Part shown: positions 3,866 through 46,490 of the stretch, one piece after another
How positions within the stretch are numbered: the stretch's first letter is position 1
Layout of the letters: the number at the start of each line of letters is the position of its first letter
IMG/VR virus record: IMGVR_UViG_3300044731_002337
Span: 124,001 to 188,000 of that record
DNA: 64,000 bases
Direction: 5' to 3' (one strand)
Made by a program: the position numbers and the translations under genes
The notes under the pieces: generated by a model
What the model saw: only the letters and a program-made list of their open reading frames with translations
The model's database searches: none
Told to the model about the DNA's origin: nothing

Positions 3866-4316
3866 GATTGAAAGGGCAACATGGCAACGGATTCATGTCA
3901 TTAGCTCATCTGATGATGACAATACATATCGAATCTTGGGGACACAGGGAAATGAATACAAGGTCACCATTGACGAGTCGAATTGGAAACATAGTACTTG
4001 TTCATGTCCGGATTTTACTCGACGTCGACGATTATGTAAACATGTTTATTATGTCTTGATTAAGGTGAAGCGAATGACACAAGAACAATTAGAAGGAGGA
4101 GAAGGAAGTAGTAAGGCTATTGAATTCTACAAACCGAATGAGGGTGATGAATGCGCCATTTGTTATGATGGATATAAGGAGAATGAAAAAGCAACATCGT
4201 GTGAAAAGTGTGCAAAACCATTTCATGTGACATGTATTAAGGCCTGGAAGTCACATTGTGAAAAGACCAGAGTCAAAGTAACATGTCCATTATGTAGACA
4301 TAAATTGACTATTTAA
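3846..4316 (+). CDS. SWIM zinc finger plus RING finger protein
   Basis: SWIM CSCPDF...LCKHVYYV; RING CAICYD...CEKCAKPFHVTCIKAW...CPLCR. Confidence 0.9.
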   Translation: MSKKLNRIERATWQRIHVISSSDDDNTYRILGTQGNEYKVTIDESNWKHSTCSCPDFTRRRRLCKHVYYVLIKVKRMTQEQLEGGEGSSKAIEFYKPNEGDECAICYDGYKENEKATSCEKCAKPFHVTCIKAWKSHCEKTRVKVTCPLCRHKLTI

Positions 4317-4444
4317 CCTTTTAGGTTGTACCGAAAAACCGCCAGATTTTATTACGGAATAATAAGTTCTGCATTGCAGTGTTCAAACATAATATTTTTC
4401 GATAAATTCCAAGGGCTTCTTATTACCCCTGGCAGTTTAGAAGG
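4317..4444 (+). mobile_element. piggyBac-like MITE, copy 1 (128 bp), flanked by TTAA
   Basis: TTAA at 4313-4316 and 4445-4448; termini CCTTTTA...TAGAAGG form a short imperfect inverted repeat; near-identical copy at 46289..46437. Confidence 0.7.
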
Positions 4445-4756
4445 TTAATCCAAACGAATAAGGATACCTCCAAGTCCTGTAATAAAGTTCATTTGTTTGG
4501 GGGTAGTAATGTGGGGGATGAGGATATGCTCATGAGGTGGAAAGGAATGGATATCTTGTTCCAGTTGTTGAAAGATGAGATCATGGTCAATTTGTTCTTG
4601 GATAAAAGTAGATCGTTCTTGATCTGAGAGAGGTTGATCGTCAATGAGATTGTGTAAATAATCTTCGGGTAGTAGCATATGGAAACCAAGCTTTTCGAAT
4701 TCGAGGGCTTTGGTCATGCGTGAAATTGGAGTGGCATCCGTTAGACCGACAATCAT
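4445..4756 (-). pseudogene. Degenerate or truncated dNMP-kinase-like protein
   Basis: Starts MIVGLT and ends LIPHITTPKQMNFITGLGGILIRLD (compare V(I/S)DVRFxNE..I...GG.IIRI); P-loop GKS/T is lost; the stop coincides with the MITE TTAA. Confidence 0.35.
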
Positions 4757-4841
4757 GGTTGGGAGAGTTTACGGTCAATGAACATAATAAGAAAGCTTGT
4801 CATCGGATGTTGTTAAAAAAAATAGATACAAAAAAAAAATC

Positions 4842-6653
4842 ATGTTATTATGGGTAACCAATTGGAGTGATGAGAAGTGTCAAGACGAATCCTATATGGT
4901 ACAAGAAGGAAATAAATATAGATTGGAATTTTATGAAGATACCAATGTCTTGGATGTATGGAGACATTATGAAGGATTTCCATGGCGAGCGTATAGTAAA
5001 TATCGTGATGGCTGTGATGTATTTGGTTCAAGGTATGCTGATATTTTAGGGTCAACTGTGAAATTACCCGTAGTAGTGACAGAAGATCAATTTGATATGA
5101 TGTTATATCCTAAGCCTAAACTGAGGAATAGGAAAAGGGTATCTTTAGTGCGGTGTGAGCATGAAAGGAGACAATTAGAAGTGTTTTTAATGTTTCATCA
5201 GCAGGTGCCTGTTGATAGAGCGATTGGGATAGTGGATAATGTGACCAAACAGTTTACATCTCCTTTTGCATTACGAATGAATTTTGGGGCACAACGTTTA
5301 ACTGGGGGTGTAATTATAGGTGATTATTGTAGTTACACTTCATCAACTGTGATTGGTTTCTTTGCCCAAAGTACTGTTGCCTCCATGTTAGCCATTGTAA
5401 AAGATACGGATTATTATACGGTAAGTAAATTGAAGCAAGATTATCCAGATATCTCCGTGTGGTGGGAAGCCAAAGATGTGGATAAAACATCAAGAAAGGT
5501 GGTTATGAATTATAATTTATGGCAAACGTGTGGTCATGAAGTAGTACAAAGGCGATGGCATAACGTGATTATTGATGAATGTCCTATTACGGATCGATTT
5601 TTGACGTCGAGTTTATGGGTAATTGATATAGGGTTTGATCGACAGGATGTATGTAGGTGGCTTGAATTGTTTCAGTGGCATGAATTATTTGGTATGGAGC
5701 AAGTGGATAGTGATGTGGAGGATATGTTTTTATTTTACAATGTTGTACACAATAAACCTGTAGATGTGACTTTACCTAAGATTCAAGTGTCTCATAAGTT
5801 TATGAAGTTTACAGAGGATTATCCGTTCAAGTGGATGTATCGAGCGTTACAAAATGGGCATAGTCGTCCAGTAGAATTATGTAAGCGCCTATTACATATG
5901 GAGATATATGATCAATTTGATGTTTTATTTTTCACAATGATCTTGTCTGATGGTGAGGTATCATCTATGTTGCCATTTGAAGAGTTGCCACATATGGAGA
6001 GAGAAGGGGATTATTCATGTGTAGTATGTCAAGATGAAGAGGCCAAAGGTTTTGTGAGAAATCAAGTGTGCGAACATGTATTGTGTTATAGTTGTATGTA
6101 TCAAGTGAATGTATTGCATCAGAAATGTCCATTGTGTCGAAGAGATTATGGTGGAGAGTTTTATAGATCGATGGTGAATTTTGGGTGGGAGCAAGTGAGA
6201 ATTCCAGAATTATGGAAGAGACCGACATCAGGTAGGATGCAAGAGTTGGTACATTTAGTGGAGGAGTTTATGAATGAGGGGAAGATTGTGATTACTTCAG
6301 GTATAGGTATTCGGTATTTGAGAATGATTGGTCAAGCTTTACAGAAAATGTTTGAGGATAAGTATGTGGTGATATGCCAGGAGTTTAAGTTGATGGATGT
6401 GAATATGGCGGATATTGTATTATTGACTCATGATGATTTATGGTATGTGAGACATCATCCTGGGATACATACATTGATTACATTAGATATAGATTTCAAT
6501 CGAATAGTGAATAAGTGTATTTATTATTATTTTAGGGAGTGTAAGAATAAGTTTGTGGTGGCACCAGCGCAAGGTATGACTGAAGTATTGGCCAATGATG
6601 TACAATGGAGTAACGAGAGAAAACTATTACAACAAATGTTGGACAAGTTTTGA
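4842..6653 (+). CDS. RING-finger protein in a degenerate Rad5/16-like SNF2 scaffold
   Basis: RING CVVCQD...CEHVLCYSC...CPLCR sits between eroded SNF2 motifs (GGVIIGD, VIIDEC, SGRMQELVHLV...KIVITS); no GKT Walker A; likely start ATG 4842. Confidence 0.6.
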   Translation: MLLWVTNWSDEKCQDESYMVQEGNKYRLEFYEDTNVLDVWRHYEGFPWRAYSKYRDGCDVFGSRYADILGSTVKLPVVVTEDQFDMMLYPKPKLRNRKRVSLVRCEHERRQLEVFLMFHQQVPVDRAIGIVDNVTKQFTSPFALRMNFGAQRLTGGVIIGDYCSYTSSTVIGFFAQSTVASMLAIVKDTDYYTVSKLKQDYPDISVWWEAKDVDKTSRKVVMNYNLWQTCGHEVVQRRWHNVIIDECPITDRFLTSSLWVIDIGFDRQDVCRWLELFQWHELFGMEQVDSDVEDMFLFYNVVHNKPVDVTLPKIQVSHKFMKFTEDYPFKWMYRALQNGHSRPVELCKRLLHMEIYDQFDVLFFTMILSDGEVSSMLPFEELPHMEREGDYSCVVCQDEEAKGFVRNQVCEHVLCYSCMYQVNVLHQKCPLCRRDYGGEFYRSMVNFGWEQVRIPELWKRPTSGRMQELVHLVEEFMNEGKIVITSGIGIRYLRMIGQALQKMFEDKYVVICQEFKLMDVNMADIVLLTHDDLWYVRHHPGIHTLITLDIDFNRIVNKCIYYYFRECKNKFVVAPAQGMTEVLANDVQWSNERKLLQQMLDKF

Positions 6654-6674
6654 GGTTGTTTAAAGAGGTTATAA

Positions 6675-7676
6675 GTGAGGTTGAGAGAGTATTCCGATAG
6701 AGGATTTATGGGTTATAAAAAAGATAGAAAGTCGAATTTGTTGAAGAAGATGAGTAAAGTGATGGTAGCGCGAACGATTCCGTCGATATTGGCGGCAGTG
6801 AAAGGGGGGGCAAAGTTGGAGGTGGTGTCGAATACCAAGACGTGGACAGCTGGTGGTGTAAAAGGATCCAAGACATGGGGTGTATTGCATATTGATGGGA
6901 AGGAAACGCCTATAGAGTTTCATGATGTGAGATGTCCTAGAGGATTGCATACCAAGACATTTGATAATAAGTTGTCCGTTTCTTTGAGTGCTTATTGGTC
7001 GGTAGATCAGTTGGCGGAGATACAAGAGTTGGAGAATTTGATTGTGCGTGAGGGTGTATTTGTAACGTATAGATCAAAGCTAACTCAGTTTGAAAAGCCG
7101 GAAGAGTTTCAAAAGTACAAATGGACTGGAGCAGCTCCACCAGCGCAACCTGTCAAGGATAAGAGTGGACTCATCAAGGAGGGGGAATTTTATCCTCGTA
7201 GTTCATATATTGATTGTCCTTTTAGCAAGACCAAAGATGATGGGCATGCACCCAATTTTGAATTGAAGAATGTAGATGGAACTGACGTGGAAATTTGGGG
7301 CAAGTTGGAAGGCTCCAAATTGAATGTAAAGCGCATGTTTGTCTCTTATGAGATTGTAGTGCCTCCAAATGGGGATAAAAATTTCAAGGTGAAGTTGATA
7401 TGTAGGGGAATTACATTGAATGAAGGGGGCAATGTGACAGTGTTGAGTGAATCACAATTGGAAAATAATGCCACCTCGAGTAATAAGAGGGTTATGAGTG
7501 AAGCATCTTCAGAACCGGATAACAAACGAAGAAGAGTGGGCGAATCATCATCATCATCAACTACTACATCTGCACCATCATCAAGCACTACGGAATCGGT
7601 CAAGGCTTCTTCTACTCCTTCTTCTGTTTCTACAGGAACGAAAGAAGCTCTCCCGACTAGAGTTGCTGTCAAGTAA
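6675..7676 (+). CDS. Hypothetical protein with Ser/Thr-rich tail; possibly NCLDV OB-fold ssDNA-binding protein
   Basis: 333 aa ORF; beta-rich core then a low-complexity tail containing NKRRR; the SSB assignment is only a loose resemblance. Confidence 0.55.
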   Translation: MRLREYSDRGFMGYKKDRKSNLLKKMSKVMVARTIPSILAAVKGGAKLEVVSNTKTWTAGGVKGSKTWGVLHIDGKETPIEFHDVRCPRGLHTKTFDNKLSVSLSAYWSVDQLAEIQELENLIVREGVFVTYRSKLTQFEKPEEFQKYKWTGAAPPAQPVKDKSGLIKEGEFYPRSSYIDCPFSKTKDDGHAPNFELKNVDGTDVEIWGKLEGSKLNVKRMFVSYEIVVPPNGDKNFKVKLICRGITLNEGGNVTVLSESQLENNATSSNKRVMSEASSEPDNKRRRVGESSSSSTTTSAPSSSTTESVKASSTPSSVSTGTKEALPTRVAVK

Positions 7677-7812: not shown

Positions 7813-8103
7813 ATGGCGTCGATGAGTCCGTACATGATTGCAGGCATAACTATTGCTTGTATTTTCTTTACAGTGTTTGTAGTAATGTGGTATAAGCGCC
7901 GGCTCATTTTCAAAGCAGTCGAGGCCAAGATTGATTTTAGTGATATTAGTTCTAAAGAGGAAGATATTTATCCAGATCGAGCTAAAGGTATGGTTCTACT
8001 CTTTGCAGGTATTGCATGCATGTGTGGATTTTTCATCTTTTTCGTCGTACAACAAAAGAGTGGTTTTATTAATGGTAACAATAAGAGTTCTTTAGAATTT
8101 TAA
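7813..8103 (+). CDS. Small two-TM membrane protein
   Basis: MASMSPYMIAGITIACIFFTVFVVMW and a second hydrophobic segment; A-rich ATG context at 7813. Confidence 0.6.
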   Translation: MASMSPYMIAGITIACIFFTVFVVMWYKRRLIFKAVEAKIDFSDISSKEEDIYPDRAKGMVLLFAGIACMCGFFIFFVVQQKSGFINGNNKSSLEF

Positions 8104-10004: not shown

Positions 10005-10560
10005 TTCTTTATTTTTATGTTATTGGGTGATATGGTTGTTCCACTTGCGTACCTATGTGCAATTCTTACATTTAAATGAAACCAGTTCTAATCTAGTGGC
10101 TATTTATGATCGAGTATTTCAAAAGTTACCTTTGATGGATGCTCAACTCTACATCACCTTTGTCATGGTACTCTTTTATGGGTGTGCGATATATGATATT
10201 TACAAACACAAGGAAAATTGGATAGTCGTATCAGATCACTATTTTTTATTAATTTCAATACGTATGATCATGATGAGCCTATTACCATTGAAGGCTTCGG
10301 ATCAGATGATCAGAGCAAGTGATGTATGGGATGTGTATACAGGGGCCTTGGTGAACGATTTATTCTTTTCTGGCCACGTAAGTTTAATTGCCTTGTTTTA
10401 TTTCCAGTTTGGGGAGCATTGGTATGGTTATTTGGTAATGGGAGTCGCAGTATCCATGGCCATGCTATTATGTCGTATGCATTATACCATTGATATCCTG
10501 GTAGCACCATTTATTAGTTTTGGGGTGGTGCATCTGCGAAAGTCTTGTTTTGGAGCATAG
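9997..10560 (+). CDS. Sphingomyelin/IPC-synthase-like PAP2_C membrane enzyme
   Basis: DLFFSGH and RMHYTIDILVA match the D3 and D4 catalytic motifs (H, H, D triad); multiple TM segments. Confidence 0.8.
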   Translation: MDISLFLCYWVIWLFHLRTYVQFLHLNETSSNLVAIYDRVFQKLPLMDAQLYITFVMVLFYGCAIYDIYKHKENWIVVSDHYFLLISIRMIMMSLLPLKASDQMIRASDVWDVYTGALVNDLFFSGHVSLIALFYFQFGEHWYGYLVMGVAVSMAMLLCRMHYTIDILVAPFISFGVVHLRKSCFGA

Positions 10561-13500
10561 ATAATGATTCAAGTGTATTCAAATCACTAGCGAATATTGC
10601 AAGTTTCTTATCCAAGTGAAGTTTGTTCTTCGTATCAATGGGTGGGAGGCATAAATTGAGGAATTGAGTGAATGCGGAAGTGGATAAATGTGCAGATAAA
10701 CCACAGCCTTTGATGCGTGAATCTTGATAGAGGTTTTGGATGTTGGAACTACTAAAATCTTTGACGACCCAGTTCATGATGTAAAAGTGAATGTGATTGG
10801 GGAGGTATGGGGAGCCAAATTGGAGGTGAATAAGGTAGTCTTTTGTAGCTACGGCGAGAAGATGACATGCCTTGTAAGTATCTTCTATGGTTGTGATGGT
10901 ATCTGAATCATAGGTACGATTTTGTCCTTCATAAAGTGAAAATTGTTTAAGAGGGATTTGTAAGGTCTTTTCAAGTAGTGTCTTGTGTTGAGAAATGAGG
11001 TTGATGATTTTGGCCATGACAACATTTGAATCCATGCCTACGACCACAGTGAGTACATGAGGTACCGTGTGAATCGTTACATGTCGTTGAAAGTTTCGTA
11101 TAGCTGTTTGCTCATCATCATCTTTAATGGGTGCAGTCACATCAACTTTGGGCTTATTATTGGTGATGGATTTTTCTAAGCTTTCTAAACGTTTTTGGAG
11201 AGCAGTTTGACCATTTCGTTGCGCATCAGCTAGGTCCTTCACATTTAAAGGTTCTTTGAGACCAGAAGTTTGTAATAATCGTGTGCTACGCTGTAAACTT
11301 GAATCATAAAGTTCTTGTAGATGAATGATTCGATCACGCTGATTACGTAATTGAATGGATTCATCTTTGACTTGTGCATTTATTTTATCTAAACGATCAC
11401 GTGTAATTTGATTGATCAGTTCATCGTCTTCAGCTTCATTGTCAAGTTGGATAACGATGGCCGGTGCTTTGGTGTCTAGATTTTCTTTCACTTGGGCTGC
11501 AGGGGCAATATCTTGTGTCTTTTGTATGAGGTCAACTTGGGTTAGGAGTGAATTGTGTCGATCTTTGAGTTCATCAATATCCTTGGGTGGATCCTTGGCA
11601 TGGATGAGTTCCTTAATTTGGTCCTGTGATTGACGAAGTTCTTTGACAATTGGTTTTAACCCATTCTCGGTTGTCGCTTCAGGTGCCTTGAGTTTTGCTG
11701 CTAATTTATCTTGTTGATCTCGAATTTGTTTGGGTTGTGGTGGTAGCATGAGTGAGTTGATACGTTCACGGGCGTCATTATATTTCAATGTGCATGCATC
11801 GATGGTGGTTTGGATGATAGTCGACGCCTTGGTTGGGTTTAATTCAAGATCATGGATACCCAACTCTTTGGCGGATCGAAGTTGGAGTAGAGTTTGAGTG
11901 ACAATGTGTTTCATTTGTTCACGAGCCCATTGACGATCAGTCTCTTTTGGGAAACGTTTAGGTAATTGAGAATCCAATAATTTACCCGTATCTTTTAATT
12001 GTTTCTCAATGAGTACAACCGCATCATTCAATTTATTCACCAATTCAGGTTCCTTTTTATTAACTTGTGATTCCAGTTCTTTTATTTTATTCTGTAATTG
12101 ATCTGTTTCCTTTTCATTGGACAAGAAACGATCCTGATACTTACGAAAGATTTGTAATTGTTCACCTTCTAGGGCACGTTTATCCTTAATGGCTTGATAA
12201 TCTGCTACTAAAATATTGTGCTGTTTTTGAGAAGCGATAATACGTTCTTCCAATTGTTTATTGAGAGCCAAAGCTTTCTCTAATTGATCTTGCCTGGATT
12301 CAGCGACTTGTTGGCGTTGTTCTAAATTGAGTACATGTTGTGCTTGACTAGCTGATTTCTTGTGACATGAATCTAGTTCATCGCGTATGGCTAAAATCTC
12401 TTGGTTCATTTGTTCGACATTGTCTGCTGATTTACAATGTTTAATTTTTTGTTTGTATTCCTGAAGCTCGTTTTCTAATTGTGACCGTTCTGCAGCGAGC
12501 ACTTTGGCCGTTTCTAATTGTTTAGCGACCTCGGCTTGAAGTTGCTTCGTAACGGTTTCACAAGTCATGGACGCCTCTTTGAGTTTTTGATTATCGGTTG
12601 CCATGGTCTTGAGACGTTCCAGCTCCAAACTTTGATTCTCAAACATGGCCTTTTTCATGTTGTACTCACTTTCCAATAGTTGATATTTGGTAGGGTCAGA
12701 GTGTGATACAAGTCGTTTGGTGAGTGTCTCGAGTTCTCGTTTTGCCTCCTTAAGTTGTGATTCCATTTCCTTCTTTTCGTTGGTGAGCTGTACAATAACC
12801 TGTGTAATCTTGGTGGTCTCTGGTTTGGTGGATTTCACAGGTGAAGTTGGATCAGTCAGTTTGGCCCGTAATTCTTCTAGACGTGAAATAGTCTCTGTTA
12901 TGGGTACTAACATGGGTTCATCTGCACGAATCGCCTTGACCTGTTCTGCTAATGAATGAATATGTTTCAGAAAGGCTCCATTTTTAGCGACACATGAAGT
13001 ACTGATATCATGGGCGAATCCAACGCGTTGTTCTACTTGTTGGTATTGAGTGTTCAGTTCATTCCAGCGTTTCTCCCAATCTGCTTCTTTCGCTTTCCAC
13101 GCCTTTTCATTGGCATCTTTCTCAGCAAGGATTCGTTTGACAGAAGAGTCTTTATCATCGATAAGCTTGGCAATAGAGGATTCCTTATCCGTCAAGATTT
13201 TTCGCAAGGTAACTTCTTTATCCTCGATAAGTTTCTTAATGGTTGAATCTTTGGAAAGGTTGGAAGCTTGATATTCGTCAGTTAGCTTTTTTATGGTGGA
13301 TTCACGTTCTTTGTGCACTTGATGTAGTTCTTGAGTAAGCTGTTTGATGCGTTGTTCTAATGTATAATATTGGGATTTAGCGTTTGCCAAGTTTTGTTTA
13401 TCAATAGGGGCATCATTGGTTAGGGTGGTAATCAATTCTAAAAGTGATGTCGTATCCTCATAAATGGTTTGTAATGATTGATGTTGGTCAATATAGGCAT

Positions 13501-13888
13501 TGTTTTGGTCCTTCAATTGATCATAAACTAGTTGAAGACGTGCAAGCTTAGTCTGATTATAATTAAATCGGTCAGTAACACGTGTTAGTTCAGCAGCGAC
13601 TTGATCACCTTGTTGAATAAATGTATTGATTTGAGTTTGTGTCTTGGATTTACAATCATCATTGGTACATGCAGCTAGTTCTTTGGTAAGACGATCACGT
13701 TGTTCTTGAAGTTGAAGACGTTGTTTGGTTAGGTCTTGACTTTGTAATTTCGCCTGGTTCATATCTTGGGTTAATTCATCTAATAGTTCTTTATAGTGTT
13801 GAATGATTTGTGTATTGGTTTCTGAACGGCTACGTAAAGAGGTATTATGTTGATTCAACTTTTCACGAATTCGTGTAAGTTCATTCAT
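10514..13888 (-). CDS. Large coiled-coil protein (about 1124 aa)
   Basis: Long heptad-rich Q/E/K/L sequence; likely start MNELTRI at 13888 after an A-run. Confidence 0.75.
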   Translation of the reverse strand: MNELTRIREKLNQHNTSLRSRSETNTQIIQHYKELLDELTQDMNQAKLQSQDLTKQRLQLQEQRDRLTKELAACTNDDCKSKTQTQINTFIQQGDQVAAELTRVTDRFNYNQTKLARLQLVYDQLKDQNNAYIDQHQSLQTIYEDTTSLLELITTLTNDAPIDKQNLANAKSQYYTLEQRIKQLTQELHQVHKERESTIKKLTDEYQASNLSKDSTIKKLIEDKEVTLRKILTDKESSIAKLIDDKDSSVKRILAEKDANEKAWKAKEADWEKRWNELNTQYQQVEQRVGFAHDISTSCVAKNGAFLKHIHSLAEQVKAIRADEPMLVPITETISRLEELRAKLTDPTSPVKSTKPETTKITQVIVQLTNEKKEMESQLKEAKRELETLTKRLVSHSDPTKYQLLESEYNMKKAMFENQSLELERLKTMATDNQKLKEASMTCETVTKQLQAEVAKQLETAKVLAAERSQLENELQEYKQKIKHCKSADNVEQMNQEILAIRDELDSCHKKSASQAQHVLNLEQRQQVAESRQDQLEKALALNKQLEERIIASQKQHNILVADYQAIKDKRALEGEQLQIFRKYQDRFLSNEKETDQLQNKIKELESQVNKKEPELVNKLNDAVVLIEKQLKDTGKLLDSQLPKRFPKETDRQWAREQMKHIVTQTLLQLRSAKELGIHDLELNPTKASTIIQTTIDACTLKYNDARERINSLMLPPQPKQIRDQQDKLAAKLKAPEATTENGLKPIVKELRQSQDQIKELIHAKDPPKDIDELKDRHNSLLTQVDLIQKTQDIAPAAQVKENLDTKAPAIVIQLDNEAEDDELINQITRDRLDKINAQVKDESIQLRNQRDRIIHLQELYDSSLQRSTRLLQTSGLKEPLNVKDLADAQRNGQTALQKRLESLEKSITNNKPKVDVTAPIKDDDEQTAIRNFQRHVTIHTVPHVLTVVVGMDSNVVMAKIINLISQHKTLLEKTLQIPLKQFSLYEGQNRTYDSDTITTIEDTYKACHLLAVATKDYLIHLQFGSPYLPNHIHFYIMNWVVKDFSSSNIQNLYQDSRIKGCGLSAHLSTSAFTQFLNLCLPPIDTKNKLHLDKKLAIFASDLNTLESLSMLQNKTFADAPPQN

Positions 13889-13933
13889 TTGCTCCTTTTT
13901 TTTTTTATTTATGACAGATAAAAGTAAAAAAAA

Positions 13934-14992
13934 ATGAAACATAGAGAGTTAACCCTTGTAACAGAAATCGATACTTTACATGATGTAATCTCACAAGGCG
14001 AAAAATCATGGATGGATCAATTGTCTAAGAAAGTAATCAATCCGCCTAAACTATGGCATAGAGTATATTATTATAAGCGTTTTTATCAACGATTTGCTGA
14101 AGCTCGTTATCGTTTTAATCATTTAATTTTACCAGTATTAGTGTGTAAATATCCTGATGCAACTAGACAAGTTCAATCGCTAGCTACTGCATTAGACATT
14201 TGGTATACGAATCCACAAGAGGACCGTTTCATATGTGATTTGATTCGAGCGATCAAGGTATGGTTACATGAAACACAAAAGAAGAGTGATGAGTATTTGC
14301 CAGTATTTCGAGAGTTGCGGAGGCAATTTGTGGTGGAAATATTGGTGAATAGGGATGTGATGATGGTAAAAAATAATATACATGAATTGATGATGTATTC
14401 TACTTTATTATGGTGTTCTCGAGGAGAGTCTCAATCTGAGATGGAATATAATCGTGGATTACCACATGAAGAGATGGCATCTGATGTACAAGATATATTG
14501 CGCCAGGTAAGGGAATATTGTCGAAAGTTAAGGTTCAAGAGGCCTCAAGAAGGGATTGCTATAAAGCATATGAGTCCATGTGAGCAATGGCATGAATTGG
14601 TATTGTATATCATGTCCTTATTTGAAATGAATCATATCATTGGTAAAGATGCATATGTCACAAGATATGAAAATGTGGATTGGATTTATATGAAGGATTG
14701 TAAAGAGATTGAATCGATTATTGAACATCCAAGTTTTTGGTTGAAGAAAAAGTTTGATATGTCATCTCCCATTGAGTTAAAGTTTAATTATTCGCAATGG
14801 TTACAGTCGAATAAGAATACGGGTTCATTGGATACTTTACCTATTCCATCTTCATTTTCTTATCATGTTAAAAATGATTGGACGGTTCAAGCACAAAAAG
14901 ATTCCCATTTGATTATAACGTCTCTGGCGATAGGCATGTGGATAGTTTACCGATTGAACCATTGGGTTATTGCTCACAGTATTCAACTATAA
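13934..14992 (+). CDS. Hypothetical protein with possible C-terminal TM
   Basis: 352 aa ORF. Confidence 0.7.
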   Translation: MKHRELTLVTEIDTLHDVISQGEKSWMDQLSKKVINPPKLWHRVYYYKRFYQRFAEARYRFNHLILPVLVCKYPDATRQVQSLATALDIWYTNPQEDRFICDLIRAIKVWLHETQKKSDEYLPVFRELRRQFVVEILVNRDVMMVKNNIHELMMYSTLLWCSRGESQSEMEYNRGLPHEEMASDVQDILRQVREYCRKLRFKRPQEGIAIKHMSPCEQWHELVLYIMSLFEMNHIIGKDAYVTRYENVDWIYMKDCKEIESIIEHPSFWLKKKFDMSSPIELKFNYSQWLQSNKNTGSLDTLPIPSSFSYHVKNDWTVQAQKDSHLIITSLAIGMWIVYRLNHWVIAHSIQL

Positions 14993-16414
14993 ATGAGTCA
15001 AGACGATCCTATGACAGCTTGGTTATTAGGAAAGACTTCACCCAAATCTTCTCCATCGCCACCACCAAGGAAACAAGCTTCCATCAAGGAAATGTTTTCG
15101 GTCAAAGCTCCAGAGCCAATTAAGAATATGTCTTCTATAGACGACTTATTCCCATTGACACGATTGACACCACAAGATGAATTTGATAAGATGCAAGTCG
15201 AGGTCCAGGAAAGAAGGGAAGAAAGGAAGAGTTCATTTGGTGTAAGGATAGGTGGAGTGAAATCGTTGGTGAGTAGTGGAGTCAAGTCAAAGCCTTATGA
15301 GATGCCACCACATTATGTGAATGAAGGACACATCAAGAAGGTCAAGGCATGGATCTTGAATACGGAGAGAACATGTCCATTAGCTTGGATTTGTGGTCCT
15401 TGTGGATGCGGAAAGACGTATATTGCTCAAAAAGCGTTGCAAGGAATTACGATCATTTCATTGGACGTTGATAGTGATATGTATACGTTGGAATATTTGC
15501 GAGAGTTATCGAATACTCGTGAATCAGTGGTCTTTGTATTGGACAATGTATCCTTTTCTGAATCTTCGGTGATGACCTTGTTGAAATTAGTAGTGCAACT
15601 ATGGGGTATCAAGAAGGATAAGAAGCAAAAGAGGCCAAAAGGACGATATGTGCCTTTGGTGTTGATTACAGAGGAGACTTATCATGCCAAGTTTAATGAA
15701 CATGTGGCGAATCTGGTGAATCACCTGAAAGTTACGGTAACACTTCCCAGTGAAACCCAAACTGAGGATATGATCAAAAAGTTGAGTTTGTCTCAAGTCA
15801 CGGCGAAGGATGTAGGATGTAATTGGCACAAGTTACGTATTCAAAAAGAGTCTGGAATTCATTATGGCATCATGTATTTGGGTAATTCGATCTTTGAGCA
15901 GTTTAAAATGTTATTCACATTAGCGAATCTGGAGAAATGGTATTACTTGTGGAGACTAGATGAGGAACAATGGATAAACATGATGTGGGAAAATATACCA
16001 AGTCGAGTATCTATTTCTCAATGGAGCAATATCACAGAATCGTTATCAGCCAATGCGATCATGTATTTGAATATTAGGGAAGAAATTGGTCGGTTTATTT
16101 GCCATGAGTTGAAACAGTATACTGAATACGTGTCTTTGCCATCCAAGGTGTATTTTCCAGCTGTGGCTTATGTGGAACGAGAATTGGTCAAGATATTACA
16201 ATTATTGAATAAGGCGGAACTGGATGAATTGATGAAGACGGAAAAGAAGAAGCGTAAAAAGATGGATACAAGTACAATGATTGAGAGACGGATACATCCT
16301 ATCGCAGCATGGAGAGGCGATTGTGATCCAGAAAAGTATGCTCGATTAGTCTTTGAAAATCCATGTCCAGACATTGTGCAAAGATATACCAGTTTATTAA
16401 AATGTACATTATAA
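14993..16414 (+). CDS. AAA+ ATPase, replication factor C large-subunit-like
   Basis: Walker A GPCGCGKT, Walker-B-like FVLDNV, PLVLITEE; TAAATG start context. Confidence 0.7.
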   Translation: MSQDDPMTAWLLGKTSPKSSPSPPPRKQASIKEMFSVKAPEPIKNMSSIDDLFPLTRLTPQDEFDKMQVEVQERREERKSSFGVRIGGVKSLVSSGVKSKPYEMPPHYVNEGHIKKVKAWILNTERTCPLAWICGPCGCGKTYIAQKALQGITIISLDVDSDMYTLEYLRELSNTRESVVFVLDNVSFSESSVMTLLKLVVQLWGIKKDKKQKRPKGRYVPLVLITEETYHAKFNEHVANLVNHLKVTVTLPSETQTEDMIKKLSLSQVTAKDVGCNWHKLRIQKESGIHYGIMYLGNSIFEQFKMLFTLANLEKWYYLWRLDEEQWINMMWENIPSRVSISQWSNITESLSANAIMYLNIREEIGRFICHELKQYTEYVSLPSKVYFPAVAYVERELVKILQLLNKAELDELMKTEKKKRKKMDTSTMIERRIHPIAAWRGDCDPEKYARLVFENPCPDIVQRYTSLLKCTL

Positions 16415-16466
16415 CGTCGTCATGCAAACTTGCGGTAACTTTTGGTTTATTCGAAGAGGTCACATT
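16413..16466 (+). repeat. Solo copy of the dispersed GGTAAC-family repeat
   Basis: 47 of 54 nt identical to 51456..51509; begins at the stop codon of the RFC-like gene. Confidence 0.8.
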
Positions 16467-16527
16467 AAGAATGAATTGTCCGATGAAAGTTGATGGATGA
16501 TTTATAATTTTTTCATTTATGTGAGAA

Positions 16528-17163
16528 ATGTATTTGGTGGGTCTAGATATTAGTTTGCGAAGTCCTGGATGGGTTGTGATTGATGAGGTGAAGAAGGTTA
16601 TACATTTATTTGGGTTACGGCAGAGAGTGAGTGATCCTTTAGGAATGTTTTGTGGGCTATGTAAAGAAGGATATACATTCAAGTTTACCCTACTATTTCA
16701 TCCATCGTTTCATTTATCCTCGGATACGGTGGCCAATCGAACCACTATCTATCAGTACATTAGTATGGCCATCATGTCAAGTTTAGTGTTAGCTATGCCA
16801 GAGCACAAAGTGAGGCCTGTTCATGTTTTGATTGAGAATTATGTGTATGGGGCTGTAGGGAGTCAAGCTATTCATTTATTATGTGAATTGGGCGGTCTAA
16901 TTCGAACCCATATTCATGCTACATTTCCTCAAGCTGTATGGGTTGAAAAGATGGCAGTATCGATTAAGAAATCGTTTACGGGATCAGGAAGAGCTAAGAA
17001 GAAGGATATGATTAATGAGTATCATCGACGGGGTTATCCTGAACTACCAAGTTCGTCTCATCCTTGGGAGGACATGGTGGACGCTTTAGCAATGGCTCTA
17101 TGTTTACGTGATAACTTGGTCAAACCTGCAATCTCATTCACATCGCAATCAAAATTGGGATAA
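16528..17163 (+). CDS. RuvC-like (poxvirus A22-type) Holliday junction resolvase
   Basis: VGLDISLRSPG, VLIENY, KKSFTGSGRAKKKDM, DMVDALAM. Confidence 0.88.
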   Translation: MYLVGLDISLRSPGWVVIDEVKKVIHLFGLRQRVSDPLGMFCGLCKEGYTFKFTLLFHPSFHLSSDTVANRTTIYQYISMAIMSSLVLAMPEHKVRPVHVLIENYVYGAVGSQAIHLLCELGGLIRTHIHATFPQAVWVEKMAVSIKKSFTGSGRAKKKDMINEYHRRGYPELPSSSHPWEDMVDALAMALCLRDNLVKPAISFTSQSKLG

Positions 17164-17525: not shown

Positions 17526-17549
17526 TTTAGTTTCTTTTTTTTTTTATTA

Positions 17550-18311: not shown

Positions 18312-18346
18312 TTTTTTTTATAAATAGGGGTATAAAAAAACATCAA

Positions 18347-20635: not shown

Positions 20636-20649
20636 GAATGAATAAGAAG

Positions 20650-21015: not shown

Positions 21016-21097
21016 TCTCCTTATATAGGTTTTTTTTTACCTTCCTATCATGTTATTGTATGTTGTTTTGAGGTTATACGTGAGAAATAAAATAGTT

Positions 21098-37830: not shown

Positions 37831-37883
37831 TGGCCTTTTTTATACACTTATTTCTGTTACGAGACCAATGCGACTAAACACGA

Positions 37884-37965
37884 GTTACCTCTCCAAATGA
37901 ACCTAAATGTTACCTCTCCAAATGAACCTAAATGTTACCTCTCCAAATGAACCTAAATGTTACCT
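37884..37965 (-). repeat. 25-bp tandem repeat (3 copies plus a partial), GGTAAC family in reverse orientation
   Basis: (gttacctctccaaatgaacctaaat) x3; reverse complement ggtaacatttaggttcatttggagaggtaac matches ggtaacttctggttcattcgaagaggtaac at 51.4 kb. Confidence 0.9.
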
Positions 37966-38028
37966 AAAGTGTGCATGATAATGGCTTGACAATAGTTCTT
38001 TTTGCATAAAAATGTGACTAATTTTATT

Positions 38029-41900: not shown

Positions 41901-43109
41901 CCACAATAAAGCCTTGCATACGGCTACTTTGTTTCGATTTGCTAGTCTTCTTAAACTTGGTATCCACTGAATTGGGGGTTTTACCATATTGGGCATTCTT
42001 GGGGATTAGTTTGCGATACTTTTCAAAGTGGAATGCAGAGATTTGGTTTTGGAGGTTTCGCCAGGCACATTGATTGGTCACGTTGCCACAAGACGCTTCA
42101 TTGGAAAGTTTACATTTGCTCAGTTTCTGGTTAATGAGTTGAAGCTGGGCCCGGTATTGTTGCCGTTGTTGAATATTGAGTTGTTTTCGTTCTTCGCTGG
42201 TTAAGGATTCTTTTTGAAAGCAAACTTTAAAATCTGGATGAATGAATCCCTTGTATAGATATTGGGAAAGAATAATGGGGTCCTTGGATTGTTGCAATTT
42301 CATTTCGAGTAAAAGTTTGCTTTGGAGGACATTTTTGAGCATCTTGGTCCAATCATTGGGGTATTGTTTAGAGCCATTTTTGGTAGGGAAAGTACTATTA
42401 GGTCTAGTGGTGAGTGCCGGGACAGCTAGAGCCGAAAACATTCGAGCCTTGGGTAAGTTGTATTGTCCAAGTCCCATAATATGCATCATTTGTTCATTCT
42501 TCGAAATGTCCTCCAAGAGTTTTTGAATTTCAAATGGACCAAACGAAATGGGCTTCCATGATGGATTGGATTGGTAAAGTTGAAAATCAGTCTTGGAAAG
42601 TGTTACAACTCCCCGTATAATATTATCATGACCCGATTCTGTTGTCCATTTGATATAGGATTTACCACATTCACATGCCCTGAAGAAACGAGTATATTTA
42701 AGTAACGTATTGAGTCGTTTTTCAGAGGGTAGTTGAAGAACTTTCTCGCACATATGGGAAGTAATGCGGAGGCGTTGACAATAAAAGCAAACTAGATTGA
42801 GTATTTTCAAAAGGGTTGACATGGCGCCTACATGGAAACAGGGAATAGGTAATTCCATATGTCCAGTATGTCCAGGACAATTATGGGTTGTCTCTCCACA
42901 TTGCTCACATAATGAATCCCATGATTTACATCCCAAAACACCTACAAGAAGAAAAGTAAAGAAAGATCAAAGGGCGAAAAAAAAAATGTACCTGAAGTAA
43001 GATCTGTATTGGTTTTGATTTCTAATACACTTTGTTTACGAACACGATCCGAGTCAATAAGGAAACATTGTAATGCATCTACTTCACGTAATGGTGGAAG
43101 TGAATCCAT
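38029..43109 (-). CDS. rpb1: RNA polymerase largest subunit (RPB1) with fused C-terminal guanylyltransferase-like domain; exons complement(join(38029..42941,42992..43109))
   Basis: CEQC...CPGHTGH, CFYC, NRAPTLH, FNADCDGDE, GTSQSGYLEKK, PGEAIG, EVYTQGNLKSPHSSG, LGSGYHF; exon 1 supplies RVRKQSVLEI; spliced length 5031 nt is in frame; an upstream in-frame ATG at 43178 is possible. Confidence 0.93.
42942..42991 (-). other. Spliceosomal-type intron in RPB1 (50 nt, phase 1)
   Basis: CAG|GTACAT...polypyrimidine...TTGTAG|GTG; joins TDLTSG to VLGCKSWDSLCEQC. Confidence 0.85.
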
Positions 43110-44262: not shown

Positions 44263-45915
44263 TTATGTGGTTTGTTGTTCTGATTCGTCTTGGTTCTTTT
44301 TTTGTCTACTGTAATCTTTAAATTTTGGGACGTCTATACGGAAGAGGCGTTGCACATTTTCGCGTAAACTTTGCTTTAGCATTTCACAATTACTTTCTTC
44401 AAGTGCAGTGGGTAGTTGGCCCTCAATAAAAAATCGATAGTAAGCATACATCTGCACATGATTTTTTGAAAACTTTTCTTTTTCCATATATTTACCATTC
44501 AAAAACTGTGTTTGGTATTCTCCAAATTCGTCAGCATGTTTTGTAAGGTACATTTGATGCAAGGTATACTTACCGTCTTCTTTTTCTTTTTCGTCACCTA
44601 ACAATTCAAGTTGCGATAAACCATTTTTGAAAACATCTTGAAGAATAGTGACATCCGATCCATTTTTGTATTTGTAATCTGCGTTAAAATATTCACGTAA
44701 GGATGCAAGGTACACTCGAACTCGATTTTTGATTCGGAGATATTGCTCAGGCGAAAAGTGTTGGTCAGGATTCTGTTGTTTCTGTTCTTTTAGATATTGG
44801 CCAATGTTTTGAAGGCATGTTGCGAATAGAGCTTTAGGTGATGGAATTGCACCGGTAATGCCTAGGTTTTCATATTCACCAGTTTGGTTCAACTTGGCAT
44901 AAGGAAACAACTTGTTTATAAAGTATTGTTCAATTTCATCCTTACCGATGGAAAGGGAAGACCAGTTGATCTCGATTTCTCTAGCCCAATATTGATCTTC
45001 AAACAAATAGTTTGCCATTTTTCTGGCGTGTTTATAGTGGTTCGCAGCAAGTTCTTCATGACTCTTAGCATTTTCGCCGCCGCCTTTTGGTTTTTTATCA
45101 TCAAAGCGTTCGATTTTTTGTTCGAATGTTAGGAAATTCTTATCCCAACTCCGGTAAGTGTAGCCAAGCGTGAAGCCACCTCGTAATGACGCAATACCCA
45201 ACCCAACAGCAGAGATGACTATAGATAAGATCCATAATGCATTGGTTTGAAACAAGCTACCATATTGAACGGAAAAGATGAGAAAGGTAATCGTAACAAA
45301 AAACACGTGTAAAGGGATGATGGTAAACAGACCATCACTCCAGCTATAGTGAGTACCATATTTCCGGTTGATGAAGAAGTAGAGAAACAAGGGGATAAAA
45401 ATTAGGATGAATAAAGTTGAATACATCATACCTTCTGTGCTACTTGAGTTCATACTTACAATGAAAAAAATACCTGCTAAATAGAATAGTGGCATAGCAA
45501 GCCATAACTCTTTCCCTCCACCAGGCCAGCTTAACATCCATGTCGATGCAGACCATACCTTCGCTCTGAAACTCTTTTTTGTTGCCTTTTCTTTGTAGAG
45601 AAGAGGTTTCTCTTCTGATGTAGTTTGTCCGTCGTCTGGTTTGTCTGTGACTGGTACTTCATTTGGTTGTGGAGGTAGTGCTGGAGGTACTGCTGGAGGT
45701 AGTTTTGAACGTATTGCTGGAGTCTCTGTCATTGGTACTACAGTTCTCTTAGTCAATGGTGATTTTGATGCTGTTCGTGGAGCCGCGCCGAATGTGAAAG
45801 GGATTGCTGGAGTCTCTGTCATTGGTACTACAGTTCTCTTAGTCAATGGTGATTTTGATGCTGTTCGTGGAGCCGCGCCGAATGTGAAAGGGATTGCTGT
45901 TTCGGGAGTGTCCAT
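44263..45915 (-). CDS. Multi-TM membrane protein with duplicated Pro-rich N-terminus
   Basis: Start MDTPETA at 45915; four hydrophobic segments; 30-aa duplication. Confidence 0.7.
   Translation of the reverse strand: MDTPETAIPFTFGAAPRTASKSPLTKRTVVPMTETPAIPFTFGAAPRTASKSPLTKRTVVPMTETPAIRSKLPPAVPPALPPQPNEVPVTDKPDDGQTTSEEKPLLYKEKATKKSFRAKVWSASTWMLSWPGGGKELWLAMPLFYLAGIFFIVSMNSSSTEGMMYSTLFILIFIPLFLYFFINRKYGTHYSWSDGLFTIIPLHVFFVTITFLIFSVQYGSLFQTNALWILSIVISAVGLGIASLRGGFTLGYTYRSWDKNFLTFEQKIERFDDKKPKGGGENAKSHEELAANHYKHARKMANYLFEDQYWAREIEINWSSLSIGKDEIEQYFINKLFPYAKLNQTGEYENLGITGAIPSPKALFATCLQNIGQYLKEQKQQNPDQHFSPEQYLRIKNRVRVYLASLREYFNADYKYKNGSDVTILQDVFKNGLSQLELLGDEKEKEDGKYTLHQMYLTKHADEFGEYQTQFLNGKYMEKEKFSKNHVQMYAYYRFFIEGQLPTALEESNCEMLKQSLRENVQRLFRIDVPKFKDYSRQKKNQDESEQQTT
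45713..45899. repeat. Exact 90-bp tandem duplication within the CDS
   Basis: AIPFTFGAAPRTASKSPLTKRTVVPMTETP occurs twice; DNA offset is 90 (45713 and 45803). Confidence 0.92.
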
Positions 45916-45982
45916 TTTCTCTTTTTTATTAATATGATTTTTTTTCAGGGGGAAAGGAAAAAAGAATTGTGGGTGATAAGAA

Positions 45983-46288
45983 ATGAGGTATGGATATCGT
46001 GAAGAACGGAAGTATATTGAAGAAACTAGGCCCAATTCTTATCTAGAACTTTCCCCGCCACCAGTGAATCAAGGTACAGCTGAAGTAAAATGGTGGCGCA
46101 TCAGTGATATTTCATCATTTCTCGTATGGTATAAACGTCCATGTAAATATATAATTCATGAGGTGTTAAATGAGGGGGAGGTTCAGACGCCGCCATGGAA
46201 AGATGATTATGTAAACTTTATCAAACTGGCAGACAGAAAGTCAATGTATGAGTATTATTATGTTATGACCAATAAAGGATATATTTAA
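45983..46288 (+). CDS. Hypothetical protein
   Basis: 101 aa; the stop codon lies in the MITE left TTAA. Confidence 0.55.
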   Translation: MRYGYREERKYIEETRPNSYLELSPPPVNQGTAEVKWWRISDISSFLVWYKRPCKYIIHEVLNEGEVQTPPWKDDYVNFIKLADRKSMYEYYYVMTNKGYI

Positions 46289-46437
46289 CCTTTTAGGTTG
46301 TACCGAAAAACCGCCAGATTTTATTACGGAATACAAAAAAATCGTAGGATCATAATAAGTTCTGCGTTGCAGAGTTCAAACATAATAATTTTTAATAAAT
46401 TCCAAGGGCTTCTCATTACCCCTGGCGGTTTAGAAGG
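46289..46437 (+). mobile_element. piggyBac-like MITE, copy 2 (149 bp), flanked by TTAA
   Basis: TTAA at 46285-46288 and 46438-46441; nearly identical to 4317..4444 apart from an internal insert of about 21 bp. Confidence 0.7.
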
Positions 46438-46490
46438 TTAATAAACTATTTTTTTTTTATTTTTATTGTGAATCACACACATGTATTTGT

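What the first reader, a model, noticed from the sequence alone, without database searches (positions are those of the whole stretch)
4313..46441. TTAA-flanked piggyBac-like MITE family inserted at stop codons
Seen: two near-identical elements (128 bp at 4317..4444 and 149 bp at 46289..46437) bounded by TTAA with CCTT...AAGG ends, plus a right-end remnant at 1896..1929. Four of the five TTAA sites overlap the TAA stop of a flanking gene; copy 1 sits exactly between two convergent stops. Established: TTAA target duplication with CC...GG termini characterises piggyBac-type elements. Inference: a eukaryotic non-autonomous transposon has colonised the viral genome at harmless sites, consistent with nuclear exposure. 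No transposase is present in the window.
Basis: partly seen in the sequence, partly recalled or inferred. Interest (0 to 1): 0.6.

Follow-up and report, generated by a model that had tools for sequence, protein, structure and literature searches.

The report
TTAA-flanked miniature transposons in giant virus
A freshwater giant-virus genome carries about ten copies of a 120-185 bp non-coding mobile element that inserts at the sequence TTAA. Almost every copy sits on the TAA stop codon of a gene, where the TTAA on each side of the element leaves the gene intact.

Summary
Window 4317-4444 and 46289-46437 are 95% identical apart from one 21-bp indel, both lie between TTAA tetranucleotides, and 1896-1929 is a right-end remnant. 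Four of the five TTAA overlap a TAA stop.

The 295-kb contig is a Nucleocytoviricota virus from lake metagenomes. It holds about ten copies: 4 full-length and 6 truncated.

The ends are a 7-bp inverted repeat (CCTTYTA) plus a 9-bp subterminal inverted repeat (AACCGCCAG). The subterminal repeat lies 13 bp from the left tip but directly against the right one.

Evidence for mobility:
- The orthologous sites of all three window copies are empty in related viruses.
- A more distant relative carries two other families with different interiors but the same ends and TTAA flanks.
- One of those families is nested in the other with an exact element-plus-4-bp gain.

Nine of ten loci touch a T-TAA stop (P about 1e-5).

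No transposase was found on the contig, and no host copy or polymorphic empty allele was seen.

Best reading: an old, fixed, TTAA-specific MITE family. It is piggyBac-like in target and termini, but superfamily membership is unproven. Host origin and nuclear exposure are unsupported. It is a new member of a known kind, of moderate interest.

The parts
4313..4316 (.). TTAA on the left of copy 1; bases 4314-4316 are the TAA stop of ORF 3846-4316(+)
4317..4444 (+). Copy 1, a 128-bp full-length element that lacks the 27-bp and 21-bp internal segments of the longest copy
4317..4323 (+). Left terminal inverted repeat CCTTTTA
   Evidence: left end compared with the reverse complement of the right end
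4324..4336 (+). 13-bp spacer found only in the left arm. Together with the tip it forms a short palindrome (AACCT TTT AGGTT)
4337..4345 (+). Left subterminal inverted repeat AACCGCCAG
4429..4437 (+). Right subterminal inverted repeat CTGGCAGTT. It has one mismatch to the left arm here and is a perfect match in copy 2
4438..4444 (+). Right terminal inverted repeat TAGAAGG
4445..4448 (.). TTAA on the right of copy 1; bases 4445-4447 are the stop (TAA on the - strand) of ORF 4445-4756(-)
46285..46288 (.). TTAA on the left of copy 2; bases 46286-46288 are the TAA stop of ORF 45983-46288(+)
46289..46437 (+). Copy 2, a 149-bp full-length element that keeps the 21-bp internal segment and has perfect subterminal repeats (46309-46317 and 46422-46430)
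46438..46441 (.). TTAA on the right of copy 2; it touches no stop. The convergent ORF 46491-48362(-) ends 49 nt further on
1896..1925 (+). Right-end remnant (copy F), the last ~30 nt of the element at 85% identity
1926..1929 (.). TTAA on the right of the remnant; bases 1926-1928 are the stop of ORF 1926-2420(-)
3846..4316 (+). SWIM + RING finger gene whose stop lies in the left TTAA of copy 1
   Evidence: ortholog in relative L033
4445..4756 (-). 103-aa gene whose stop lies in the right TTAA of copy 1
45983..46288 (+). 101-aa gene whose stop lies in the left TTAA of copy 2
8100..8103 (.). Context: an unoccupied TTAA shared as overlapping stops by convergent ORFs ending at 8103(+) and 8100(-). 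It models the state of the copy 1 site before insertion

Best explanation
The two elements and the remnant belong to a family of about ten small, non-coding, non-autonomous cut-and-paste DNA transposons (MITEs). They live in the genome of a freshwater giant virus (Nucleocytoviricota).

Anatomy: each intact copy reads TTAA, then CCTTTTA, a 13-bp spacer, AACCGCCAG, an interior, CTGGCRGTT, TAGAAGG, then TTAA. That is a 7-bp terminal inverted repeat plus a 9-bp subterminal inverted repeat whose distance from the tip differs between the two ends.

Mechanism: a transposase supplied in trans (not on the 295 kb in hand) recognised these ends and integrated the element at TTAA, duplicating the TTAA. 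The transposase is most probably of the piggyBac superfamily.

Why stop codons: the insertion leaves TTAA on both sides. An insertion into a T-TAA stop, or into a TTAA shared by two convergent stops, therefore leaves every reading frame and stop intact. In a 90%-coding genome those are the insertions that persist.

Decay: copies then erode by deletion from the side that is not held in place by a gene, leaving stop-adjacent remnants.

Shown here: the family, its ends, the TTAA flanks, empty orthologous sites, sister families with the same ends, a nested insertion, and the stop-codon enrichment.

Inferred: TTAA duplication as opposed to an element-borne TTAA, the piggyBac-type enzyme, and selection as the cause of the stop bias.

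My odds: a TTAA-specific mobile element about 0.85; a piggyBac-superfamily enzyme specifically about 0.55.
For: 1. Family. Ten loci on the contig share the sequence, with 86-95% identity among the four full copies. Internal 27-bp and 21-bp indels and truncations are typical of a decaying MITE family.

2. Boundaries. All 5 recognisable left ends and 9 of 10 right ends abut TTAA; the tenth has TTGA.

3. Ends. The left end and the reverse complement of the right end align as CCTTYTA plus AACCGCCAG, with a 13-bp spacer on the left only.

4. Empty orthologous sites.
- In relative L033 the convergent orthologs of the genes flanking copy 1 have adjacent stops with nothing between them.
- The ortholog of the gene beside the remnant also ends in a TTAA. 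It has only a 31-nt spacer and no remnant.
- At the copy 2 site, relative L037 has a 49-nt spacer. The window has 202 nt, which is 49 + 149 + 4. Another relative has 14 nt by its gene calls.

5. Sister families. Six contigs of a related giant virus (30-65% amino-acid identity) carry two other families. Their interiors are unrelated, but they have the same right end, a similar left end and TTAA flanks.

6. Nested insertion. In L023 one family interrupts the other by exactly 150 + 4 bp, with TTAA on both sides. Three uninterrupted copies have 4 nt at that point. Neighbouring elements also share a TTAA.

7. The pre-insertion state is realistic. Three other convergent gene pairs on the contig share one TTAA as overlapping stops.

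8. Stop bias. 9 of 10 loci sit at T-TAA stops, against 19-27% expected from intergenic TTAA sites (P = 3e-6 to 7e-5).

9. piggyBac signature. A published bona fide piggyBac family has a TTAA duplication and a terminal repeat starting CCCTTT (PMC2997546). The sister families here start CCCTTTA.
Against: - No transposase. PF13843 (piggyBac) and eight other transposase or recombinase families give no hit on the contig. The PF13843 search had no positive control genome.
- No element longer than about 190 bp with these ends was found anywhere: eight scans of viral contigs, one metagenome scan and two scans of prokaryotic genomes.
- No polymorphic empty allele was seen. Five assemblies and four independent runs all carry copy 1, although only assembled contigs could be laid.
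- The terminal repeat is short (7 + 9 bp). In this virus it starts CCTT rather than the usual CCC.
- Sequence alone cannot separate a duplicated TTAA from an element that carries its own 3' TTAA and inserts next to a TTAA.
- Left ends carry a palindrome whose sequence varies while the pairing is kept. That is more typical of structure-recognising enzymes.
- The relatives used for empty sites are only 38-71% identical in protein, so the non-coding DNA is not alignable base by base.
Confidence: 0.72

Rival explanations
1. It is a mobile element of another mechanism. One option is a single-strand HUH/Y1 transposon derivative (IS200/IS605-type, palindrome-associated) that inserts 3' of TTAA and itself ends in TTAA. 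Another is a Crypton-like element integrated by site-specific recombination at a TTAA core. In either case the second TTAA is not a target duplication.
For: 14 of 15 left ends in the three families carry a palindrome of at least 5 bp starting within 0-7 nt of the TTAA, against 7% of control TTAA sites. The stem sequences differ between families, so the pairing rather than the sequence is conserved. Right ends have a subterminal hairpin about 12 nt before the tip, a spacing reminiscent of IS608 right ends and Helitron 3' ends (from memory). The nested insertion and the shared TTAA are equally well explained. No DDE transposase was found.
Against: The two ends are inverted copies of each other (7 + 9 bp). 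That is expected for DDE transposases and not for IS200/IS605, Helitrons or Cryptons. No Y1, TnpB, tyrosine or serine recombinase is on the contig. The end motifs are absent from 185,579 prokaryotic species genomes. Orientation is 7 plus to 3 minus, which is no clear strand bias.
Confidence: 0.15
2. It is a TTAA MITE as in the best explanation, but it is a host (cellular eukaryote) transposon mobilised by a host-encoded transposase while viral DNA was in the nucleus.
For: No transposase is on the 295 kb in hand. MITEs previously found in giant viruses had autonomous partners in their amoebal hosts (PMC6004678). Five loose ends in the read laying belong to copies that are not on this contig.
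Against: No cellular copy was found, although no eukaryotic genome collection could be searched directly. The virus has its own RNA polymerase subunits, so a nuclear phase is not implied. Three families with the same ends occur in two giant viruses that share only about 50% RNR identity. This needs either a shared host or an enzyme that travels with the viruses. The extra flanks are AT-rich like the virus, and CheckV rates the contig only 55% complete, so they may simply be the rest of the genome.
Confidence: 0.3
3. It is not mobile. It is a conserved 3' regulatory element (transcript 3'-end or terminator hairpin, or a small structured RNA) placed directly after stop codons.
For: 9 of 10 loci start at a stop codon. 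The minus strand of copy 1 folds better than shuffles (z = -3.3). The 60 nt after element-bearing stops fold at -10 to -13 kcal/mol for several of those genes, against a genome mean of -5.4.
Against: The element is absent from the orthologous gene ends in relatives. Either end of the element can face the gene, so there is no fixed orientation. Only about 10 of 258 genes have it. There is no Rfam match. RNAalifold gives a covariation term of +0.38 with one compensatory pair in 33. The genome shows no general hairpin rule after stops. The interiors of sister families are unrelated while the tips are conserved.
Confidence: 0.04

Closest known systems
piggyBac superfamily non-autonomous elements (for example npiggy MITEs of mammals; piggyBac/IFP2 and tagalong insertions in baculovirus genomes)
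   Same: - Obligate TTAA on both sides.
- Tips of the CCY...RGG type. A published piggyBac family has the terminal repeat CCCTTTGCACTCG (PMC2997546), and the sister families here start CCCTTTA.
- Terminal plus subterminal repeats with unequal spacing at the two ends, as in Trichoplusia ni piggyBac (3 versus 31 bp spacers, from memory).
- Small size and no ORF.
- Residence in a large DNA virus has a precedent in baculovirus few-polyhedra mutants (from memory).
   Different: - No DDE_Tnp_1_7 transposase was found with matching ends.
- The terminal repeat is only 7 + 9 bp and starts CCTT in this virus.
- The host genome is a protist-type giant virus from lake water, not an insect virus.
- The copies are old and fixed rather than new laboratory insertions.
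- The left ends carry a structure-conserved palindrome.
MITEs of giant viruses (Submariner in Pandoravirus salinus; hAT, CMC and IS200/IS605-derived MITEs in the 2018 survey of 5,170 viral genomes)
   Same: Multi-copy, non-autonomous, intergenic elements in Nucleocytoviricota genomes, with the transposase absent from the virus (PMC4495683, PMC6004678).
   Different: That survey found four superfamilies (hAT, CMC, Tc1/mariner, IS200/IS605). Its text contains neither 'piggyBac' nor 'TTAA'. The published cases have host partners, and none is known here. The near-exclusive placement on stop codons is not described there.
IS200/IS605-derived palindrome-associated elements (PATEs)
   Same: Hairpins near both ends, insertion next to a fixed tetranucleotide, and small non-coding derivatives.
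   Different: Those elements lack inverted-repeat ends and depend on a Y1 transposase. Here the ends are inverted repeats and no Y1 or TnpB gene is present.

Membership tests
MITE (generic definition) | Short (<600 bp), no coding capacity, multiple copies at non-homologous loci | tested here: met
   120-185 bp, ten loci on the contig, and no ORF of its own
MITE (generic definition) | Terminal inverted repeats and a flanking direct repeat of the target | tested here: met
   CCTTYTA plus AACCGCCAG inverted at the two ends; TTAA on both sides of every intact end
MITE (generic definition) | Presence/absence at orthologous or paralogous sites | tested here: met
   Empty orthologous sites for the three window loci. 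Nested insertion compared with uninterrupted paralogous copies in a relative. No polymorphism within the virus population
piggyBac superfamily | 4-bp TTAA target-site duplication | tested here: inconclusive
   TTAA flanks are universal. The nested insertion adds exactly element + 4 bp between two TTAA, and adjacent elements share a TTAA. An element-borne 3' TTAA inserted beside a TTAA would look the same.
piggyBac superfamily | Terminal inverted repeats beginning 5'-CCY and ending RGG-3' | tested here: met
   CCTTTTA...TAGAAGG here and CCCTTTA...TAGAAGG in the sister families. Compare CCCTTTGCACTCG in a published piggyBac family
piggyBac superfamily | Subterminal repeats with asymmetric spacing at the left and right ends | tested here: met
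   AACCGCCAG lies 13 bp from the left tip and 0 bp from the right tip, in families 1 and 2. The comparison with T. ni piggyBac is from memory
piggyBac superfamily | Autonomous partner encoding a DDE_Tnp_1_7 (PF13843) transposase between matching ends | tested here: not met
   No PF13843 hit on the 295-kb contig (no positive control available). No long element with these ends in any collection scanned. The contig is estimated at 55% of the genome, and no host genome could be searched
piggyBac superfamily | Precise excision restoring a single TTAA | not testable with these tools
   Only assembled contigs of public runs could be laid, and no excised allele was seen
IS200/IS605-type PATE | No inverted-repeat ends; subterminal hairpins; Y1 (HUH) transposase | tested here: not met
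   Hairpins are present, but the ends are inverted repeats and PF01797 and PF07282 are absent
Viral 3'-end hairpin signal (Mimivirus 'hairpin rule') | Present after most genes, fixed orientation, conserved at orthologous gene ends | tested here: not met
   The 60 nt after stops fold less well than coding windows genome-wide. The element is absent in orthologs, occurs in either orientation and shows no covariation

The most novel reading that the evidence does not exclude
The TTAA transposon system is resident in a lineage of freshwater giant viruses rather than borrowed from a host. At least three MITE families with unrelated interiors but the same 8-20 nt termini occur in two viruses that share only about 50% protein identity. 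This would imply a transposase carried by the viruses themselves, or by a virophage or transpoviron-like companion, and acting in the virus factory. That enzyme would be either a divergent piggyBac or an undescribed TTAA-specific enzyme that reads the structure-conserved left-terminal palindrome. The stop-codon placement might then reflect real target choice or a recruited 3'-end function, not only selection.
Probability: 0.25. Interest if true: 0.75.

Novelty: new member of a known kind. Interest (0 to 1): 0.5.

Why it matters
Transposable elements in giant viruses are few and mostly known from amoeba-grown isolates. A TTAA-specific, piggyBac-like family has not turned up in the surveys I could read. 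Here it occurs in an uncultured lake virus that is found nearly unchanged in at least eight studies.

The case shows compactly how the target sequence decides which insertions a dense genome can keep. Because TTAA contains TAA on both strands, the element can sit on a stop codon, or between two convergent stops, without altering any protein.

Shared termini across families in two distant relatives give a concrete handle for finding the enzyme. The two end motifs can be used to look for a transposase active on giant-virus DNA.

If that enzyme proves to be virus-borne, it would be a new route of gene flow among giant viruses.

Tried and rejected
**Transposase on the contig.** Six-frame HMM searches for PF13843, PF01609, PF01797, PF07282, PF13359, PF00665, PF13358, PF00589 and PF00239 all gave no hit.

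**The 390-aa genes upstream of the partial copies A and D.** They looked like candidate cargo of an autonomous element. One is kinase-like and the other tubulin-like, they are unrelated to each other, and no left end lies upstream. Rejected.

**ORFs next to the MITE clusters of the related virus.** No transposase domains.

**More copies or an autonomous element in public collections.**
- Eight scans of IMG/VR contigs (end motifs, a degenerate left-end pattern, one protein query, two loose-end flanks) found nothing.
- Two scans of prokaryotic genomes found nothing.
- The single metagenome scan gave 19 loci. Six are real sister elements. The other 13 share only the 18-mer and look like chance, including L021, whose match runs 8 nt into the flank but which has no protein similarity to the virus.

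**Polymorphic empty sites.** Logan contigs of four runs laid on window 1200-7000 (5,801 letters, within the operators' limit) show no joint across copy 1. The one joint seen (4378 to 4417) is copy B mapping onto copy 1. All five assemblies with the flanking protein carry the element.

**Structured RNA.** No Rfam hit and no covariation.

**Hairpin rule for 3' ends.** Not a feature of this genome.

**A weak right-end-like match at window 46545-46569.** It lies inside ORF 46491-48362 with E = 0.36 and is taken as chance.

**Virus classification.** No Capsid_NCLDV hit on the contig (and the control rang nowhere). Rpb2 has only two relatives at E < 1e-50. The Atlas places it with Nucleocytoviricota clusters. 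Order and host remain unknown.

**Not used.** The large representative-protein search, structure prediction and complex prediction were not used, because no claim needed them. No genetic code other than the standard stops was invoked.


Full report
**What the window is.** The window is bases 124,001-188,000 of a 294,773-bp IMG/VR virus contig that CheckV rates 55% complete. It encodes RNA polymerase Rpb1 and Rpb2, both subunits of ribonucleotide reductase, an SNF2 helicase and RING proteins. It is about 90% coding by a simple ORF model. Its Rpb2 groups with Nucleocytoviricota clusters. Nearly identical sequence is present in lake-water metagenomes from at least eight studies and in five assemblies. 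I take it to be a free giant virus of an uncultured freshwater lineage. Its Rpb2 has only two relatives below E = 1e-50, at 78% and 56% identity.

**The observation.**
- Copy 1 (4317-4444, 128 bp) and copy 2 (46289-46437, 149 bp) each lie between two TTAA. They begin CCTTTT and end GAAGG.
- They are 94.9% identical apart from one 21-bp indel.
- The end motifs occur twice in the window, against none in shuffles.
- Window 1896-1929 is a 34-nt right-end remnant that also ends in TTAA.
- Four of the five TTAA overlap the TAA stop of an ORF. Copy 1 sits exactly between the stops of two convergent ORFs.

**The whole family.** Searching the full contig gives ten loci.
- There are four full-length copies: copy 1, copy 2, E at contig 112,501-112,683 and H at 224,135-224,256.
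- There are six partial ones: A, B, C, D, F (the window remnant) and I.
- E is the longest at 175 bp. It holds a 27-bp and a 21-bp segment that other copies lack in different combinations.
- Copy C has expanded the 27-bp segment to four tandem units.
- Full copies are 86-95% identical to each other.
- All five recognisable left ends and nine of ten right ends abut TTAA; the tenth has TTGA.
- Read laying also revealed five flanks that are not on this contig, so more copies exist in the unassembled part of the genome or elsewhere in the samples.

**Anatomy of the ends.** Aligning the left end with the reverse complement of the right end gives a 7-bp terminal inverted repeat, CCTTTTA against CCTTCTA. 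A 9-bp subterminal inverted repeat, AACCGCCAG, follows it. That repeat is perfect in copy 2 and has one mismatch in copy 1. It lies 13 bp inside the left tip but directly against the right terminal repeat. The element has no ORF.

**Is it mobile, or a conserved 3' element?** Four lines of evidence bear on this.

1. *Orthologous sites in relatives are empty.*
- Contig L033 has RNR small subunit 71% identical and the same gene order. In it, the orthologs of the two genes flanking copy 1 (52% and 38% identity) have adjacent stops, TTA next to TGA, with nothing between them.
- The ortholog of the gene beside the remnant is also 164 aa and also ends in a TTAA. Only 31 nt separate it from the RNR gene, and there is no remnant.
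- At the copy 2 site, relative L037 has 49 nt between the convergent orthologs. The window has 202 nt, which is 49 plus the 149-bp element plus 4.
- A further relative has 14 nt there by its gene calls.

- These contigs carry two other element families with unrelated interiors, of about 150 bp and about 71 bp.
- Both have TTAA flanks, a left end CCCTTTA and the same right end TAGAAGG.
- In the larger family the AAACCGCC subterminal repeat has the same left-only spacer.
- Conserved tips with free interiors is what a shared transposase predicts.

3. *A nested insertion.* In L023 the 150-bp family sits inside a copy of the 71-bp family. Against three uninterrupted copies, the gain is exactly 154 bp bounded by TTAA on both sides, where the intact copies have four bases. 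Several neighbouring elements in those contigs share a single TTAA between them.

4. *No support for an RNA or terminator role.*
- There is no Rfam hit.
- RNAalifold finds essentially no covariation beyond the pairing of the two tips.
- Either end of the element can face the adjacent gene.
- This genome shows no general tendency to hairpins after stops.

It is therefore not met, and the mobile-element reading stands.

What I did not find is mobility within the present population. Every assembly and every run examined has copy 1 in place. The insertions are old and fixed.

**The stop-codon pattern.** Nine of ten loci have a flanking TTAA that overlaps the TAA stop of an ORF of 100 aa or more.
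- With a crude gene set of 258 ORFs, the contig has about 31 pre-insertion T-TAA stop sites.
- It has 132 other intergenic TTAA, or 82 after removing those within 60 nt upstream of a start codon.
- Nine of ten at stops is then improbable (P = 3e-6 and 7e-5).

My explanation, which is inference, has three parts.
- TTAA contains TAA on both strands and is present on both sides after insertion. A stop-codon TTAA is therefore the one target where nothing is changed in any protein, and the insertion lies as far as possible from the next promoter.
- Three other convergent gene pairs on the contig share one TTAA as overlapping stops, one of them at window 8100-8103. This is exactly the state that removing copy 1 and one TTAA would restore.
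- Survivorship adds to the bias. In every partial copy, the end that is retained is the one that abuts the stop codon. This is expected if deletions erode the element from the unconstrained side but cannot run into the gene.

Among the four full-length copies, three touch a stop. The fourth ends 2 nt past one. A real target preference or a recruited function is not excluded.

In the related virus, which has longer intergenic regions, the elements cluster with each other rather than on stops. This favours selection over enzyme preference.

**Which enzyme?** No transposase or recombinase of nine families is detectable on the contig. The genes beside the partial copies A and D are kinase-like and tubulin-like, not transposases. 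The ORFs around the MITE clusters of the relative have no transposase domains. No long element with these ends was found in any collection.

The assignment therefore rests on signature. An obligate TTAA on both sides, together with CCY...RGG tips and asymmetric subterminal repeats, is the piggyBac pattern. A published piggyBac family has the terminal repeat CCCTTTGCACTCG next to its TTAA duplication (PMC2997546).

Two points count against a confident assignment.
- The repeats are short.
- Left ends carry a palindrome starting within a few bases of the TTAA in 14 of 15 ends across the three families, against 7% of control TTAA sites. At least six different stem sequences occur. Right ends have a subterminal hairpin about 12 nt from the tip.

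That could be the binding site of a dimeric DNA-binding domain. It could also point to an enzyme that reads DNA structure, such as the HUH transposases, in which case the second TTAA would belong to the element. Sequence alone cannot separate these. I give piggyBac-type about 0.55, another mechanism about 0.15-0.2, and a mobile element of some kind about 0.85.

**Origin.** The virus has its own transcription enzymes. Sister families with the same ends occur in a second, distant member of the clade, whereas a closer relative lacks the element at three sites and in about 16 kb examined. This fits repeated activity of an enzyme that accompanies these viruses or a shared host. No eukaryotic genome collection was available to search.

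**Comparison with the literature.** MITEs in giant viruses are established, from the Pandoravirus Submariner family (PMC4495683) and a survey of 5,170 viral genomes (PMC6004678). That survey reports hAT, CMC, Tc1/mariner and IS200/IS605 derivatives, and its text contains neither 'piggyBac' nor 'TTAA'. Searches combining piggyBac with giant-virus terms gave no report of such a family. TTAA elements in large DNA viruses are classical for baculoviruses (from memory). I therefore rate this a new member of a known kind. It has two features worth a specialist's attention: the stop-codon nesting, and the shared termini and left palindromes across families.

Noticed in passing
window 1-64000; contig G000 1-294773: There is strong strand asymmetry. 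GC skew on the + strand is +0.09 to +0.34 in every 4-kb bin of the window, whatever the gene orientation, and +0.10 to +0.26 along the contig. In the last ~15 kb (from ~280 kb) it flips to -0.13. This may mark a replication terminus or origin, or an inverted terminal segment.
   Followed up: partly
L012, L013, L017, L020, L023, L025 and G000 copies (left ends): The left tips of all three TTAA-element families carry a palindrome of at least 5 bp that starts 0-7 nt from the TTAA, in 14 of 15 ends against 7% of control TTAA sites. The stem sequences differ, so the pairing rather than the sequence is conserved. This is unexplained.
   Followed up: partly
window 8100-8103; G000 45012-45015 and 191419-191422: Three convergent gene pairs share a single TTAA as overlapping stop codons on the two strands. 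These are unoccupied sites of the kind that copy 1 occupies.
   Followed up: yes
window 22780-26124 (-): The ribonucleotide reductase large subunit is 1,114 aa. It has a weak Hint-domain hit at residues 307-354, between the all-alpha and barrel domains, so it probably carries an intein.
   Followed up: no
window 19975-20631: A ~650-bp AT-rich array of degenerate tandem repeats (periods about 21, 50, 72 and 106 nt) lies in an apparently non-coding stretch. It could be a promoter cluster or a replication-related region.
   Followed up: no
window 51315-51550; also window 16412-16466 and 37880-37983, and G000 1-107, 31795-31896, 42202-42492, 44528-44702, 72828-72927, 219613-219690, 231062-231114, 266471-266566: A second dispersed repeat family is built of 24/48-nt tandem units at ten or more loci. 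The contig starts inside one such array, which may be why the assembly broke there.
   Followed up: no
window 45713-45899, inside ORF 44263-46035 (-): A perfect 90-bp tandem duplication (2.1 copies, 100% identity) lies inside a coding region. It is a very recent in-frame duplication of 30 codons.
   Followed up: no
G000 78011-78118 (copy C, outside the window): A 27-bp internal segment of the element is expanded to four tandem units in one copy. The same segment is single in copies B and E and absent from copies 1, 2 and H.
   Followed up: yes
G000 83720-84892 and 10034-22060 (outside the window): There is a 390-aa tubulin-like ORF with a GGTGGG motif, and a tandem pair of ~2,000-aa paralogous ORFs.
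   Followed up: no
L035 10843 / L036 10624: A sequence resembling a family-3 left end (TTAA, CCCGTTCC, then a hairpin) lies inside the called 899-aa gene of the related virus, with no matching right end nearby. It may be chance or an old in-gene insertion.
   Followed up: no
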